A stretch of 64,000 nt of DNA, taken from assembly GCA_904063045.1 (NCBI GenBank), contig CAJFCJ010000012.1, forward strand, positions 1,364,001 to 1,428,000, given 5' to 3'. Source of the DNA: Dimorphilus gyrociliatus. Lineage: Eukaryota; Animalia; Annelida. The first letter of the stretch is position 1. Each line of letters opens with the position of its first letter. The position numbers were made by a program, and so were the translations under genes. Of the stretch, positions 1 through 26,143 are shown one piece after another. The notes below the pieces were generated by a model that was not told the origin of the DNA, did not search any database, and was given only the letters and a program-made list of their open reading frames with translations.

Positions 1-3000
1 GTTGAATAGTAGTCACTTTAATACCCTCGGGAGATACTTCTTGCCGAAGGGCTTGAGATAGTCCCTCGACAAAGAATTTAGTCCCACTATAAACCGCTAA
101 GCCAGGAAATCCCCTTCTTCCAGCATTAGACGTGATATTTATAATATGACCCTTCTTTGCTTTTATCATTAGAGGAAGAATGGGCTCCAAACAGTTTAAT
201 ACTCCCTTACAATTAATATCTACTTGCTTGTTCCACTCTTCTACTCGAGGATTCTTCATCTCTCCGTAGAACATGACGCCAGCATTGTTGACTAGAACAT
301 CTACTTCCCCTAGGCTAGTTCTAACATGATTAACTGCTTCTTTTACACTAGTTCTATCACAAACGTCGCATTCAATAGCGATAGCTGACCCTCCATTCTT
401 TGAAATTTCACCTGCTATTATTTTTAGCTTGTCCACTCTTCTAGCAAGTAAGGCAACTCGCATTCCGTTCTCAGCTAGTTTCCTAGCAATTGCTTCTCCA
501 ATACCACTGGATGCCCCAGTTACTACAGCAACCCGTTTATCTAAAATTCTCTCCACTGCAAAAATTATCGCAAATATTCCAATTAAGTAAAAAACAGAAG
601 CAATAACACATTATAGAGGGTCTCAACTGACCTATGGTATTTTTCCTAACAGGTAATATAACACCTCTACTAGCCATTTTCGAAAAATATGTTTGTATAA
701 GAGCGTGATCTAATTGTGGATAAGCTAAATCAAGCTCCCCTAGAATTTTCTCCGTTGACACGCGATTAAATATATTCTTGCACGTAAAAAATTCGTTCTT
801 TCTATGGAATCAGGTGTATATGATGAGTAAAGTATCTAAGAGAAGTTGATATTTGATACAGTACTTAACTGCTCCATTGATAAGCCTCAATAAGCTGTTA
901 CAGAACTCAAGAGATGAGTTCTCATTGAGCCTAATTTGAAAAAAAAAATTCGATTAATTTACCAGAAAGTGTATAGATTGAGAAATGGAAGAAAACGAAA
1001 GATATAACATGATAATTACAAGCTTTCCCATCTTTCAAAGGAGACGTATCGAATATTGTAGCCGTGGGATATAAGCCAATCAAATAACCATCTCGACTTA
1101 AGAGGATATGTTTGTATCAAATGAAGAACTTTCCCTAAACCCAATACCATTTGCTTTGTCAAATTGACAATAACCTTACTGGCAAAGTCAACTGGTGTCA
1201 TTTCAATTTCCCAATCGACATCGGGTGTTGCACCAACGCCAATGCAACATTGTAAATTCAATAAGTTAAAATCTTCGGGGTTCCAATATGCTTCTTTTGA
1301 GTCCCCGCTTAGATTTCCTTAGGAAAAATGTTAGAAATTGTAACACATACACATGTAACAATTTTTTTCATACCTAGTCTATAAATAGTAGCAGGTAGAC
1401 CTTTGTTCATAGCTCTTTTTACGAGTTGTTCTGCGACCCACTTAGTTTGGGAGTAACCTTCCGTTAACTGATCCGAAACTTGATTCATATCAGTATTTTC
1501 ATTGCAATCTCTCATGTCATGAGGAAACACGGCATTCGTACTATTTCGGAATTAGAATAAGATTACAAATTGAACTACAATCAATCTTAAGCTTTTACCT
1601 AATGTAGTGGAGTGGTTTAATCTTACTTGTACAGGAGAATGCTAAAATATTGCTTGTACCAAGAACGTTTGGGGCGTAAAGAGCCTATAAGTTTAATTAA
1701 ATAATCACTATTGAGAAGATAATTATCCTTATAGAAAATAGACATTACCCTATATGGATAAATAAGATTAACATAAGCTGCTGTGTGTATTATAAAACCA
1801 ATTTCGGCACACAAATAATTGTATTCATCTTCGTTAACGCCCAGTTTCATTAAGCTTATGTCACCTGTAGAATAATTGTATAGGTAAATGAAAAGATAAT
1901 GAAAGTTTAGTTTTTATGGACGGTAATTAAACACCTTTAACGGCGACGACCCGCTGCGAGAATTTAGCTTCGATTACAGTTTCTTCAGCTGTTGCATGCT
2001 CTTTGTTCAAAGGCAGTATGCCGTAAGATCTTAAATTTTGCTTTATCCTATCAATCCCCGTTAAATCCGCAGTGTCTCTAACAAGACAAAATATGTGCAT
2101 CTGCGGATTATTCCATGGTTAGATAATTAGATTTTACAATCAATTTAATTAATGGAAAAAACCTTTGTTTTTAATAGTAATTCTCTTATTAAGAAGGCCC
2201 CGAGGAAACCTGTTGCTCCTGTTAGTAAAACGTTGCTCTGATTCCATCTATCTCCAAATCGTAGAGACCTCCAGAAGGCTCTTAATTGCATATCCATGCC
2301 TGTTATAATCTGATCGTGTTTCTCCACTTCTTTTTTCAAGTCGACCTTTACGAGTTCATTTTCGTGTCTTCGTTCACCTTTCACCTTTAAATCTAATAAC
2401 TTTCCAAGATCGCTTACAGTATTATAGGCGAATAGATCTCTAACAGGAATTTCAATGTTGAATTCCTCTTGAATTTTGTTTAAGAGTTTCGTAGCTAGTA
2501 ATGAATGACCACCTAGGTCAAAAAAACTTTCATTGATGTCTACTGCGTCTAATGAGAGAACTCCACACCATATTCGCGATAATATCTTCTCAGTTTCTAA
2601 ATGATGTGAATACGATATGTTTACTATATACTATCATTAATTAAATAACACTTATACCAGTTGATGGTAAACAATCCGGATCTATTCCGGCTTTAGTGTT
2701 AATTGGGGGCAAAGCTTTTTTGTTTAATTTGCCTGAGGATGCTAAAATTGGGATTCTAAGTGAGAAGAGAATTAAGTAAATTATATTGTCATGATATCTT
2801 GTTTATATATAGAAAGTATTCATTTGTTAGAGAAATACAAACTTTTCTAGAAAGATAAAATGAGACGGAATCATGTAAAAAGGTACCTTCCGCTTCATTG
2901 CTATTCTAATGGATCTAGCTGTTACATCTGTCGACTTTTTCACTATATATGCAACTAATGTTTTTTCCTTTCCCTCTTCTCCAATAACTGAACATACTGC

Positions 3001-4837
3001 ATTTTGTACAAGGTCACTTGTCTCGAGTAAAGCAGCCTCAACAGCTTGTAGCTCTATAGAGTAACCTCGAATTTTTGCCATGCTGTCGCATCTCCCGCAA
3101 ATCTCAAGGCTACCGTCAGCTCTCATAAAACCCCAGTCGCCACATCTATAAAGTCTATCACCCATGTAAGATGGGAGGCTTTTAGGGCGCTTAATGAAAC
3201 GTAGAGCATTTAGATCTGGTCTATTGAGATAACCTCTTGCAAGCGTTGGCCCCCCGACATAAATCTTTTTTTTTTAAGGAACAATTATAGATTCATAAAG
3301 AATTTTGAATTTGTATAAAGTTTCTTACCTCCCCCTGGGCTCCTTGGGGCTGTACATTCAAATCGTCGTCTAAAATGACAACATGAACACCTGGAAGAAG
3401 GCTGCCAGTACCGCAATAGTTTCTCTCATCGTATTGACTCTATTAGTAAAAAAAAATATGATTATAGTATTGTATTAAATTTTGTAAACAAACAGAATTT
3501 TCTCTCCAGGATTTGCTCATATCATCGCAACTGATATCGTGGGCTTCAGAAACGCTATACAAATTAATGTATTGAATCCAGCTTAACAATTTCATACATT
3601 TCTTGAAAAGACTTGTCGTCACTACTTCACCGCAGAATAAAATCGCTCGCATAGACTTGAAAGAATTTTCTATATCAGCCAATTTACTATCCATGACGGC
3701 TTCGAGCAATGATGGCGTAAATAGCATTCTTGTTATTTTGTTGGTTTTCAAAAATTTACATAGTTCGACAGGGTCGTATATTATGTCATCGGGGATTATG
3801 TACATAGTTGTTCCTAAATTTTTTACAAAACGTTTAGATAATCCCTAAATCCTATTGGAAATACAATATCACAAACCTCTGAGGAGTGGTCTAAGCATTT
3901 CCCACACGAAGAATATATTACACGCTTCCCTTTCATCCTCACCGTAGGGGAAGGCTTCGTGCCGCCAATGATAAGAGAATACGGCTCCTCTATGCGGACA
4001 AAGGATACCTTTTTAGGTAGTAATATTAGTTAAAATCTCAATGGAATAATTATTTGGAAAAGAAATTGATTACCTTTCGGTTTTCCGGTAGTTCCAGAGG
4101 AGTAAACTGTATAAGCTAAATCATCTAGAGTTACTGTTGGTTCGCCAATCAATTTTGGATGGTGATCATTCTCTTTCACCATATCATTAGGCCAATTTTG
4201 CGATAGGACGATAACTTCTTTAGCATCTATAGTTAACAATTATACAAATTAGTCAACGTATATACAGCTTATACTTGTACACGTTATTACTTTGAACTTG
4301 GCTCTCGTTAGAAGGGAGAGTAACGACAGCAGCAGGTTCAGAATCCGACAAGATAGTGTCAATTAAGGATTGTGGATAAGAAGGATCAATAGGCATATAG
4401 GCTCCACCTTTATAGGAAAATATGATAGTAGATGATTTAAACTATTAAATAAAGGATATTTTAAGGAAATCAACCTGCTTTAAGAATCGCTATATAGGCT
4501 ATAGAGTACTCCACGCATCTCTTCATGTATATGCCAACAATTGAGTTGGGTTTTACACCCTTATGTCTAAGATTTATGCTTAAAATATCTGTTAGTTCAT
4601 CCAATTCTTTAAAAGTGATGCTGCCTCCATCGGCCGAAACAATTGCCGTCTGTGTTTTAGCGTTATTATATTTATTAAATTAGAAAGGAAAGACGTAACT
4701 AACATTTAGAAAATACAGTTAAATAAATAAAAAAAAAGTAAATAATTCACTTTATTTGGCGTAAGTTTGGCTTGACGACGAAACATGTCATGCAAAAGAC
4801 CAAGATGTTCATATTCGAACGTTTTTGGAGGAGCCAT
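1..4837 (-). CDS. ATRR: NRPS-like multidomain reductase, A-T-R(thioester reductase)-SDR, glycine betaine reductase (ATRR) type; multi-exon, 3' end beyond the window edge
   Basis: Spliced exons give an A domain (YSSGTTGKPKG, ACNIFFVWEMLRPL, FCGEVVT, NLYSVSEAHD, RLYRCGDWG, RCDSMAKIRGYSIEL), a carrier domain (FFDLGGHSLLATKL, Ser codon 2502-2504), a thioester reductase (LLTGATGFLG, HTAAYVN, GYSQTKWVAE) and a C-terminal SDR (VVTGASSGIG, LVNNAG, VYSGTK). First in-frame ATG is at 4837 (MAPPKT); an upstream in-frame exon near 4891-4949 may extend the N-terminus. Confidence 0.9.
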
Positions 4838-6020
4838 TCCTTTTGTCTTTATTAAGAACAAATTAATGATTGCACAAGTCCAAAGTTAACCTCTTTAAGC
4901 TTTTTATCTTGAAAAATTGATAAAAAATAATCCAGATAGAACTCGTCTGTTAAAAATAGAAAAAAAAGCAAACCAAAAATAAAAGGTTACTATAATCGTA
5001 AAAATGCTCATGTTTATTCAAATAATTAAGTTTGTCTTTTATCTCTTTTTAATATAAAACGCTTAATTAACCATTAAATTTCTATATAATGTATATATTA
5101 ATATTTTGTACATATAATAAAAATAGGTGATTGTTATTTATTTCAAAATATAATTATTAAAATGTATGGCGTAAACGTTGTAAAATTTATTCGTACGCCA
5201 TCTACCGATAAGAAATAAAGTTGAAAAAAGAAAATGAAATATCGTATTGTAAAGGGGCGGAAGGAACGCTTTCTAAACTACGTAAACCTTTGTTGACGGT
5301 AGTGGTCCTAAATTTAATTCTATTGATTTTAATACTATAAAGAAATTGAAAAAACTCTCTGATAATGGAAAATTTCTACTGCAAAACACTATTTCCAGAA
5401 TATGCTTTACATTAATGGCTTCTTTTTGACGATAGATTGACGTCATCTCTTTATGTCTTTGTTTCTTTCTTTCATATCTAATTTGATAATTCATAAAAAA
5501 AGGAAGCTTCTTGAAAGATAAAGCTTTAAAGGCAAAAGAGAAGTTAATAGTTTAATTAAAAAGAAGAAACCCTTTCTTTTAAACTTATAATAAAAGATTG
5601 TTAACAAATATAATTATATAAAAAAAAATCGATTCAATCAGCGTTTTCTTGTCAGTATGGTTTTTATTATTATTATAAAACAGAAAGCAAAAAGAAGAAG
5701 TATCAAATTTCGTAAAAAGATGAAAAGGAAAAAAATATCCTCAGCAGATAATAATAATTGTGCAATTCATTGGAAACAGAAATTTTTGAAGAAAAACAGT
5801 TACAAATTATACTAATATAAACAAATCAAAAATATTGATAGTGATTCTTTTTTTGTTCTTTCTTTTTACTGCTTCGTTAATCTCTTTCTCTTTCTTTCTC
5901 TCTCTCTCTCTCTCTCTCTCTGTCCCTGCCTCTTTTTTAACTTTATAAAATAACTATCTAATAACTCATTTTTTAAAACTCTGAAAATTATCACAATGGC
6001 TGTAAAACACTATTTATTTA

Positions 6021-25028: not shown

Positions 25029-26143
25029 ATGAGATCAAGTAAATTTGGATTTCTCTTGATATTAACAGTCTTCGTAGACTTTTCCAACCAATGGATTATT
25101 CCACTTGGTATAGGCGGTTTACTCACCGGAGTTGCCTGGAAATATTTACCATGTGCCTCTGTATTTTTTGAATGCTGTGATCAGAAATGGTTTAATAAAA
25201 ATAACATTACAGGTAGTGTAAAAAAAGCTTATGAGCGATAATACAATGATTATGTAATTTAAGGTCAACTTAACCTGCGTTGCTTTTTGCAGCATTGACT
25301 AAATCATTGGAAGAAAGTTTATATGGTCAACATTTGGTATTGAAGACTGTTGTTCCAGCTTTAAAAAGACATTTAACAAATAAAAATCCTCCAAAAGCAT
25401 TAGTTTTATCTTTCCATGGATGGACAGGTGGCGGGAAGAACTACGTTAGTCGTAAGATTGCTGAAAGCCTCTTCAAAAAAGGAACAGCTAGTAAATATTA
25501 CCACTTATTTGTTGCTACCCTTCACTTTCCCCATAAAGAAATGAATAGCATTTATAAAGATAACATACAACAATGGATTAAAGGTAACGTTTCCGAATGC
25601 CCTCATCAGCTTTTCATTTTCGACGAAGTTGATAAAATGTCGGCTGGACTTATTGATGCAATTCAACCATTCATAGATTTTCACGACAATGTTGAAAATA
25701 TTGACTACCGTCATAGTATATTTTTATTCCTCAGTAATACTGGAGGTGATATGATAAATAGGCAAATGGTTAAGATGTGGCGGAATGGACTAACACGGGA
25801 TGATATTCAATTGAAAGATATGGAGTCTCTTATACAGAATTTAGCATTTAATAATAAAGACGGAACTGGTTTATGGCATAGCTCACTAGTCGAGAGAAAT
25901 TTAATAACTGCTCTGATCCCTTTTCTACCACTTGAAAAGCATCATGTCAAGAAATGCGCAAGGGATTATTTACTATCACGTTCGCATACAAAGATAGCCT
26001 ATGACGATGATTTTCTGAACCAAATTGCCAATCAGATGACTTATCAGCCAAAAGATTCTCAATTATATTCGACATCGGGCTGTAAAAGGGTTGCTCAACA
26101 CTGCGATTTGTTAATTTATAACCATAGTAACGAAGATTTATAG
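25029..26143 (+). CDS. TOR1: Torsin family ER AAA+ ATPase (2 exons)
   Basis: Signal peptide plus hydrophobic segment; KALVLSFHGWTGGGKNYVS (Walker A), LFIFDEVDKM (Walker B), FLSNTGG, SGCK; C-terminal NEDL. Confidence 0.95.

What the first reader, a model, noticed from the sequence alone, without database searches (positions are those of the whole stretch)
1..4837. Animal NRPS-like A-T-R-SDR enzyme: a possible betaine-to-choline reductase
Seen: one spliced gene encodes adenylation, phosphopantetheinyl carrier (GGHSL), thioester reductase and a fused classical SDR. More than a dozen short introns match the neighbouring genes, so it is a native nuclear gene. Established: this four-domain order is that of fungal ATRR, which activates glycine betaine and reduces it in two NADPH steps (aldehyde, then choline). 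The textbook animal flux is the opposite (choline oxidation to betaine), and NRPS-like enzymes are rare in animals. Inference: this invertebrate may recycle its osmolyte betaine into choline for phosphatidylcholine or acetylcholine. I know of no biochemical characterisation of an animal copy.
Basis: partly seen in the sequence, partly recalled or inferred. Interest (0 to 1): 0.85.

Follow-up and report, generated by a model that had tools for sequence, protein, structure and literature searches.

The report
Animal ATRR-type betaine reductase gene
This is a real, expressed and conserved animal gene for a four-domain enzyme of the ATRR family, which in fungi turns glycine betaine into choline. 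The family was already reported in invertebrates, so this copy is a new member, not a new kind of enzyme.

Summary
A minus-strand gene starts at the ATG at 4837. It has 18 exons and 17 GT-AG introns of 54-101 nt, and it runs off the window start about 64 codons before its stop. One spliced transcript contig (run X3, 100% identical) joins every exon, so the adenylation (A), carrier (T), thioester-reductase (R1) and short-chain dehydrogenase (R2) domains sit on one mRNA.

All catalytic motifs are intact. Comparison with a related species gives dN/dS of about 0.06.

Full-length orthologues with the same four domains, 44-53% identical, occur in at least eight animal phyla. The window protein falls inside that animal clade, together with the nematode ATRR group.

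The substrate pocket lacks the amino-binding Asp. It keeps two of the three fungal cage aromatics, F210 and W213, and an acidic residue, D314. The third aromatic, fungal W270, is Leu here, and this position varies across animals.

A betaine-to-choline function is therefore plausible, about 0.6, but unproven.

The finding is not new in kind. Hai et al. (2019) noted invertebrate copies, Zhang et al. (2024) studied the Meloidogyne enzyme, and a 2025 paper mentions mollusc homologues. A diatom enzyme with the same architecture is reported to reduce tryptophan.

This scan also noted the same stretch from an overlapping window.

The parts
1..4837 (-). ATRR-type gene, coding sequence from the ATG (4837) to the window edge. 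The 18 exons are 4837-4751, 4649-4475, 4407-4291, 4226-4074, 4008-3877, 3813-3494, 3439-3329, 3264-2843, 2755-2658, 2596-2163, 2100-1935, 1864-1749, 1684-1599, 1540-1374, 1317-1020, 930-865, 801-632 and 555-1.
   Evidence: Model. Every intron is confirmed by the spliced contig of run X3.
2713..4816 (-). Adenylation (A) domain, aa 8-520, exons 1-9. Core motifs: YSSGTTGKPKG, NLYSVSE, YRCGD, GRCDSMAKIRGYSIE, and SSGKLNKK with K515.
   Evidence: Pfam AMP-binding and AMP-binding_C. Motif positions.
3899..3916 (-). Pocket motif IFFVWE. I209 replaces the amino-binding Asp (PheA D235). F210 and W213 are the equivalents of A. nidulans F201 and W204.
   Evidence: Family alignment: F210 is present in 22 of 22 animal sequences and W213 in 21 of 22.
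3626..3640 (-). LFCGE. L280 (3638-3640) is the equivalent of A. nidulans W270, the third wall of the aromatic cage.
   Evidence: Spacing to the flanking landmarks is 67 and 34, against 66 and 34 in A. nidulans. The position is W in 10 of 22 animal sequences and L, I, V or H in 12, with at least 6 changes on the tree.
3533..3565 (-). A5 motif NLYSVSE followed by D314, the acidic pocket residue equivalent to A. nidulans E304.
   Evidence: D is present in 22 of 22 animal sequences.
2376..2579 (-). Carrier (T) domain. The phosphopantetheine attachment Ser570 lies in GGHSL (2499-2513).
   Evidence: Pfam PP-binding, 2.2e-19. Position.
750..2234 (-). Thioester reductase R1. NADPH motif TGATGFLG (2199-2222). 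Catalytic YSQTK (1441-1455), where Y835 is the equivalent of A. nidulans Y811.
   Evidence: Pfam NAD_binding_4 on three exons. TIGR01746 passes its cut-off on the orthologue P0284.
2..541 (-). Classical short-chain dehydrogenase R2, cut by the window edge. Motifs: TGASSGIG (497-520, G1053 equivalent to G1036), NNAG, the Ser in NITSNAG, and YSGTK (77-91, Y1195 equivalent to Y1178). The ARR after strand 2 points to NADPH use.
   Evidence: Pfam adh_short, 1.3e-55. The best solved relative is clavaldehyde dehydrogenase 2jah at 2e-39, and YdfG 3asu scores 5e-26.

Best explanation
The gene encodes the animal orthologue of ATRR, a single-module NRPS-like enzyme that reduces a carboxylic acid to an alcohol.

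Inferred mechanism, from the fungal enzyme and the intact motifs:
1. The A domain adenylates a small cationic carboxylate, most likely glycine betaine. The substrate is held by F210, F211 and W213 and by the acidic D314, not by the usual amino-binding Asp.
2. The acyl group is loaded on the phosphopantetheine arm of Ser570.
3. R1 reduces the thioester to the aldehyde with NADPH (Y835/K839).
4. The fused R2 reduces the aldehyde to the alcohol, choline, with a second NADPH (S1182/Y1195/K1199).

Shown here: the gene structure, transcription as one mRNA, intact motifs, purifying selection, and orthology with a family spread across animals that includes the nematode ATRRs.

Inferred, not shown: the substrate and the physiological role, which would be turning stored osmolyte betaine back into choline.
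For: - Domains and motifs.
- One spliced transcript covers all 18 exons, and spliced pieces also occur in two marine metatranscriptomes.
- dN/dS is 0.061 over 739 codons against the related contig L003. Of 14 variants seen in the environmental transcripts, 11 are synonymous.
- The window protein is 44-53% identical over its full length to A-T-R-SDR proteins of annelid, mollusc, nemertean, echinoderm, tunicate, cnidarian, insect and nematode species.
- The tree puts it inside the animal clade (SH-aLRT 90), whose subgroups follow the phyla.
- The pocket is almost fixed in animals and lacks Asp235.
- Spacing of the landmark residues matches A. nidulans ATRR.
- R2 is closest to an aldehyde-reducing short-chain dehydrogenase.
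- The fungal enzyme's chemistry is established. The nematode orthologue relieves betaine toxicity in yeast.
Against: - The equivalent of W270, one of the three cage aromatics named for the fungal enzyme, is Leu here. It is non-aromatic in 12 of 22 animal sequences.
- The acidic residue is Asp, not Glu.
- No fungal ATRR sequence could be fetched, so orthology to the characterised enzyme rests on architecture, landmark spacing and the literature.
- I found no in-vitro assay of an animal enzyme.
- A diatom A-T-R1-R2 enzyme is reported to make tryptophanol from tryptophan.
- The 2024 paper says nematode ATRRs differ from the fungal enzyme at 5 of 10 pocket positions.
Confidence: 0.6

Rival explanations
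1. The chemistry is the same, a carboxylate reduced to an alcohol in two NADPH steps, but the substrate differs. Candidates are another small onium acid (dimethylglycine, dimethylsulfonioacetate or another osmolyte betaine) or an aromatic amino acid, as claimed for the diatom enzyme. The product would then not be choline.
For: - L280 stands in place of the fungal cage residue W270, and D314 in place of E304.
- The position of L280 has changed at least 6 times among animals.
- Diatom PtNRPS1, with the same architecture and an F215-V216 pocket motif, is reported to make tryptophanol.
- Nematode and fungal pockets differ at 5 of 10 sites.
Against: - The Asp that binds an alpha-amino group is absent in every family member, which argues against a normal amino-acid substrate.
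- F210, F211, W213, C282, L306 and D314 are fixed or nearly fixed across animals, including the species that keep Trp at the variable site. One shared substrate is therefore likely.
- The nematode enzyme, with Ile or His at that site, still acts on betaine in yeast.
- In the diatom paper aromatic amino acids were poor substrates in the adenylation assay, and the authors allow for other substrates.
Confidence: 0.27
2. It belongs to another animal or fungal NRPS-like family: Lys2 alpha-aminoadipate reductase, Ebony, AASDH/ACSF4-U26, or a generic carboxylic acid reductase.
For: It shares the A-T core with all of them and the thioester reductase with Lys2 and the carboxylic acid reductases. Weak NCBIfam matches to these families exist.
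Against: - The orthologue P0284 scores 398 bits on the Lys2 model against a cut-off of 1030, and 172 bits on the carboxylic acid reductase model against a cut-off of 1300.
- None of these families carries a C-terminal classical short-chain dehydrogenase, which is present here on the same mRNA.
- No Ebony-type or PQQ-repeat C-terminus was found.
Confidence: 0.03
3. It is not the animal's own working gene but a contaminant, a recent transfer or a decaying copy. Other notes of this scan report microsporidian-like contigs in the assembly.
For: Earlier notes of this scan mention contigs from a different organism in the same assembly.
Against: - The same contig carries typical animal genes: torsin, plus ORFs whose translations I read as a nuclear-receptor ligand domain and zinc fingers but did not search.
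- The 17 short GT-AG introns are spliced in RNA.
- The protein sits inside the animal clade.
- The reading frame is open, and dN/dS is 0.06.
Confidence: 0.02

Closest known systems
Aspergillus nidulans ATRR, glycine betaine reductase (Hai, Huang and Tang 2019; bioRxiv 10.1101/559534)
   Same: - Domain order A-T-R1-R2, with a YdfG-like short-chain dehydrogenase as R2.
- No Asp235 in the pocket.
- The F and W of the aromatic cage and an acidic pocket residue are present.
- Both catalytic Tyr residues and the R2 NADPH Gly are present, with the same or near-same spacing (3 / 66-67 / 34 / 142).
   Different: - The third cage aromatic, W270, is Leu.
- The acid is Asp, not Glu.
- The gene is in an animal and has 17 introns.
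- I could not align the two sequences directly.
Meloidogyne incognita MiATRR and the other nematode ATRRs (Zhang et al. 2024, PMC11050029)
   Same: - Same architecture and same animal clade. Bursaphelenchus P0301 is 44% identical over the full length, and the Meloidogyne enterolobii fragments P0317 and P0347 are 44-45% identical.
- Same pocket, apart from the one variable site, which is non-aromatic in the nematodes too (His or Ile).
   Different: - Different phylum and different life style.
- The nematode work links the enzyme to plant parasitism.
- Its evidence is yeast growth and RNAi, not enzyme assays.
Phaeodactylum tricornutum PtNRPS1 (Nat Commun 2026, PMC13194791)
   Same: A-T-R1-R2 architecture and a four-electron reduction of an acid to an alcohol.
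   Different: Its reported substrate is L-tryptophan and its product is tryptophanol.
Clavaldehyde dehydrogenase (PDB 2jah) and E. coli YdfG (PDB 3asu)
   Same: The R2 exon matches them at 2e-39 and 5e-26. All are NADPH-type classical short-chain dehydrogenases acting on small carbonyls, and 2jah reduces an aldehyde to an alcohol.
   Different: Both are free-standing bacterial enzymes with other substrates.

Membership tests
ATRR (NRPS-like glycine betaine reductase) | [quoted passage not shown] | tested here: met
   Pfam per exon. One spliced transcript joins all exons. R2 matches YdfG-type short-chain dehydrogenases.
ATRR (NRPS-like glycine betaine reductase) | Catalytic residues: T-domain Ser, R1 Tyr (Y811), R2 Tyr (Y1178) and the R2 NADPH-site Gly (G1036) | tested here: met
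   S570 in GGHSL, Y835 in YSQTK, Y1195 in YSGTK and G1053 in TGASSGIG. The G-to-Y spacing is 142, as in A. nidulans.
ATRR (NRPS-like glycine betaine reductase) | The A-domain pocket lacks the alpha-amino-binding Asp (PheA D235) | tested here: met
   I209 occupies that position, and it is Ile or Val in the whole family.
ATRR (NRPS-like glycine betaine reductase) | Aromatic cage residues F201 and W204 | tested here: met
   F210 and W213 are fixed or nearly fixed in animal orthologues (22/22 and 21/22).
ATRR (NRPS-like glycine betaine reductase) | Aromatic cage residue W270 | tested here: not met
   L280 is at the matching position (spacing 67/34 against 66/34). Trp is kept in 10 of 22 animal sequences and in all bacterial, oomycete and dinoflagellate relatives.
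ATRR (NRPS-like glycine betaine reductase) | Anionic pocket residue E304 | tested here: inconclusive
   D314 is an acid but one carbon shorter. Asp is found in 22 of 22 animal sequences, and Glu only in the two dinoflagellate sequences.
ATRR (NRPS-like glycine betaine reductase) | Groups with characterised ATRRs in a phylogeny | tested here: inconclusive
   It groups with the nematode ATRR lineage inside an animal clade. No fungal ATRR sequence could be fetched, so the link to the enzyme that has been assayed in vitro was not tested.
ATRR (NRPS-like glycine betaine reductase) | [quoted passage not shown] | not testable with these tools
   This needs an enzyme assay.
Lys2 (alpha-aminoadipate reductase) | Passes the curated equivalog model TIGR03443, with an A-T-R architecture and no second reductase | tested here: not met
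   The orthologue P0284 scores 398 bits against a cut-off of 1030. An extra short-chain dehydrogenase domain is present.
Carboxylic acid reductase (NF041592) | Passes the curated equivalog model | tested here: not met
   The orthologue P0284 scores 172 bits against a cut-off of 1300.
Ebony / AASDH (ACSF4-U26) | A-T followed by an amine-selecting domain (Ebony) or by PQQ-type repeats (AASDH), with no thioester reductase | tested here: not met
   The region after T is NAD_binding_4 followed by adh_short. No sequence comparison with named Ebony or AASDH proteins was possible.

The most novel reading that the evidence does not exclude
In this lineage, and repeatedly in other animals, the Trp wall of the betaine cage has been swapped for an aliphatic residue while the rest of the pocket stays fixed. 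This could mark a shift of the animal enzymes to a different small zwitterion. The enzyme would then make a choline analogue or amino alcohol not yet known from animal metabolism.
Probability: 0.2. Interest if true: 0.6.

Novelty: new member of a known kind. Interest (0 to 1): 0.35.

Why it matters
If the enzyme reduces betaine, many invertebrates can run the choline-to-betaine pathway backwards at the cost of one ATP and two NADPH. Textbooks treat that pathway as one-way in animals. Such a route would let marine animals draw choline for membranes and acetylcholine from their osmolyte pool.

The idea is already in the literature for fungi and nematodes. This gene adds another lineage and a clean, transcript-supported gene model.

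The search also showed that the family spans at least eight animal phyla. One cage residue flips between Trp and aliphatic residues, which gives a ready set of natural variants for testing substrate specificity.

Tried and rejected
**The main obstacle.** The spliced protein has no reference, so I could not hand it whole to the search or fold tools.

**Searches that failed:**
- The one representative-library search, run with exon 8, returned only giant multi-module NRPSs, because scores add up over modules.
- A profile built on a bacterial A-T-R scaffold (A3) was flooded by bacterial NRPSs. A local rebuild showed my own protein would score 833 bits, below the listing cut-off of 953.
- Adding more exons made the tool's MAFFT scatter the fragments.
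- A scan of metagenome contigs with the pocket exon found nothing.
- The first plasmid accession I asked for was not in the collection.
- A Ralstonia plasmid locus (L001) was dropped unused. The tool says proteins known only from such loci should not be handed to profile searches.
- A profile with a junk row first (A6) found only relatives of the junk row.

**The search that worked.** Alignment A7 has the pocket exon as its first row and three more exons below. It also includes a 798-aa antisense ORF of a Streptomyces NRPS gene (L002), used only to widen the length limit. That row has no biological meaning. The hit P0277 belongs to it and should be ignored.

**Other dead ends:**
- The protein atlas gave neither the organism nor a fungal cluster.
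- Rfam found nothing in the window.
- No ATRR structure is in the PDB.
- I could not name the organism. It is marine, and the tree does not resolve it to any phylum represented there.
Full report
**Gene model**

Six-frame translation of 1-5000 shows a chain of minus-strand coding segments. Listing the frame-preserving GT-AG pairs between them gave a model of 18 exons and 17 introns of 54-101 nt. It starts at the ATG at 4837 and yields 1224 residues before the window ends inside the last domain.

**Transcript evidence**

Reads settle the model. One 4930-nt contig of run X3 lies on the stretch with no mismatches and skips exactly the predicted introns. The tool displays 15 of the joints. The contig's own coordinates account for exons 3-5 to the base, which covers the two joints that are not displayed.

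The short-chain dehydrogenase is therefore on the same mRNA as the adenylation, carrier and thioester-reductase parts.

A coral metatranscriptome and a marine metatranscriptome hold spliced pieces that are 95-99% alike. Of the 14 differences seen in them, 11 are synonymous and 3 are conservative.

The X3 contig runs 1210 nt past the window start. Only about 195 nt of coding sequence are expected there, so the rest is a long 3' UTR or something else that I did not resolve.

**Domains and catalytic motifs**

Pfam on single exons gives AMP-binding, AMP-binding_C, PP-binding, NAD_binding_4 and adh_short. The motifs needed for each step are present:
- A domain: A3 YSSGTTGKPKG, A5 NLYSVSE, A7 YRCGD, A8 GRCDSMAKIRGYSIE, and the A10 lysine K515.
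- T domain: carrier Ser570 in GGHSL.
- R1: TGATGFLG and YSQTK.
- R2: TGASSGIG, NNAG, the Ser in NITSNAG, and YSGTK.

The R2 exon is closest among solved structures to clavaldehyde dehydrogenase (2e-39), an NADPH enzyme that reduces an aldehyde to an alcohol. It also matches E. coli YdfG. The ARR that follows the second strand of R2 is the usual mark of NADPH-preferring classical short-chain dehydrogenases. That reading comes from my own knowledge of the family.

**Selection**

A Logan genomic contig from a related species (L003) carries the same gene, exon for exon. Over 739 aligned codons dN is 0.063 and dS is 1.02, giving a ratio of 0.061.

The last exon of L003 continues for 64 residues after the point where the window ends and then stops. 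The protein is therefore about 1288 residues long and ends with the short-chain dehydrogenase domain.

**Relatives**

Getting relatives was hard, because a spliced protein has no reference. Details are in the field on failed attempts.

The search that worked returned full-length proteins of 1230-1350 residues carrying AMP-binding, PP-binding, NAD_binding_4 and adh_short from:
- Annelids: Capitella.
- Molluscs: Lymnaea, Physella, Bulinus, Aplysia, Argopecten, Pinctada.
- Nemerteans: Lineus.
- Tunicates: Phallusia.
- Echinoderms: Acanthaster, Patiria.
- Cnidarians: Rhopilema.
- Insects: Macrosteles, Diploptera, Bacillus rossius, Lycorma, Planococcus.
- Nematodes: Bursaphelenchus.

Shorter or partial sequences came from Nematostella (cnidarian), Babylonia, Potamilus and Batillaria (molluscs), Timema and Bradysia (insects), and Meloidogyne (nematode).

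The window protein aligns with them from residue 7 to its last residue, at 44-53% identity.

A maximum-likelihood tree puts it inside an animal clade (SH-aLRT 90). Within that clade, molluscs, insects, echinoderms plus tunicate, cnidarians and nematodes each group together, which is the pattern of vertical descent. The window's own branch is unresolved and has no named sister.

Outside the animals lie:
- unnamed eukaryotes, one on an intron-bearing contig;
- a protist from the MMETSP transcriptome collection;
- dinoflagellates and an amoebozoan;
- oomycete proteins with an added hydrolase domain;
- bacterial A-T-R proteins of about 995 residues.

**The substrate pocket**

The motif SVWEM of PheA aligns in register with FVWEM here, which lets me read off the specificity positions. 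For positions 235/236/239/278/299/301/322/330/331/517 the code is I F W S L C L D I K.

Hai et al. name F201, W204 and W270 as an aromatic cage and E304 as the nearby anion. They also stress the loss of Asp235.
- Here Asp235 is Ile.
- F210 and W213 match F201 and W204.
- D314 sits where E304 does.
- L280 sits where W270 does.

The mapping rests on spacing: 3, 67 and 34 here against 3, 66 and 34 in A. nidulans. The R2 Gly-to-Tyr distance is 142 in both.

Across 22 animal sequences, F210, S256, C282, D314 and K515 never vary. F211 and W213 vary once each, and L306 twice. Position 280 is W in 10, L in 4, I in 4, V in 3 and H in 1, with at least six changes on the tree.

The nematodes have His or Ile at this position. 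That agrees with the single variable pocket site reported for plant-parasitic nematodes.

The near-fixed remainder of the pocket argues for one shared substrate in animals. The missing Asp and the kept aromatics and acid argue that this substrate is a small cation-bearing acid, not a normal amino acid. Betaine is the best candidate, but that remains an inference.

**What is already known**

- Hai et al. wrote in 2019 that atrr genes occur mostly in fungi and also in several protist and invertebrate species.
- Zhang et al. (2024) found ATRR in nematodes of clades III and IV. They showed that the Meloidogyne enzyme lets yeast grow on high betaine and that RNAi against it impairs parasitism. They did not assay purified enzyme.
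- A 2025 paper on mollusc NRPS genes mentions the molluscan glycine-betaine reductase homologue in passing.
- A 2026 paper assigns a diatom enzyme of the same architecture to tryptophan reduction. It reports that aromatic amino acids were poor substrates in the adenylation assay, and its authors allow for other substrates.

Function outside fungi is therefore not settled, and I found no in-vitro assay of an animal enzyme.

**Other families**

On the Capitella orthologue, the Lys2 equivalog model scores 398 bits against a cut-off of 1030. The carboxylic acid reductase model scores 172 bits against 1300. The generic thioester-reductase domain model passes its cut-off.

Ebony and AASDH do not carry a thioester reductase or a terminal short-chain dehydrogenase. 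The closest solved structures are bacterial NRPS modules, and no ATRR structure has been deposited.

**Verdict**

The family assignment is sound on architecture, motifs, landmark spacing and orthology with the nematode ATRRs.

The betaine-to-choline function is the most likely reading, at about 0.6. It is weakened by the Leu at the W270 position and by the diatom report.

The gene is a new member of a known kind. The wide spread of the family in animals and the flipping cage residue are the most useful by-products of this check.

Noticed in passing
P0314, P0316, P0319-P0323, P0328, P0332: Bacterial A-T-R proteins of about 995 residues, one of them from a deltaproteobacterial genome bin, carry nearly the same pocket (I F F W S W L N T D V K) but no second reductase. 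They could be betaine-to-betaine-aldehyde reductases. The 2019 paper called atrr exclusive to eukaryotes.
   Followed up: partly
P0336-P0338 and P0326: Oomycete proteins (Peronospora, Phytophthora) and one unnamed Logan sequence have the animal-type pocket. They lack the short-chain dehydrogenase domain and carry thioesterase/hydrolase Pfam domains. A region of about 280 residues that does not align precedes their adenylation domain.
   Followed up: no
P0309 (Capitella teleta): Capitella has a second, closely related paralogue of 1030 residues without the short-chain dehydrogenase domain. It has Tyr in place of the cage Trp at position 239.
   Followed up: no
window 1, continuing beyond the window: The X3 transcript contig runs 1210 nt past the window start, although only about 195 nt of coding sequence remain. 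This is either a 3' UTR of about 1 kb or a contig that merges with a neighbouring transcript.
   Followed up: no
L003:1088-6160: A related species (Logan contig from SRR23372228) has the same gene with the same exon layout. Per-exon protein identity is 85-100% for the eight exons compared, and synonymous sites are near saturation.
   Followed up: yes
window 25283-26140 (+): A single long ORF encodes a torsin-family AAA+ protein. The atlas score is 0.99 to Torsin-1A clusters.
   Followed up: partly
window 1-64000: No Rfam family reaches its gathering score anywhere in the window.
   Followed up: yes
other contigs of the same assembly: Earlier notes of this scan describe microsporidian-like contigs in the assembly. 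This window's contig carries animal genes and is not one of them.
   Followed up: no
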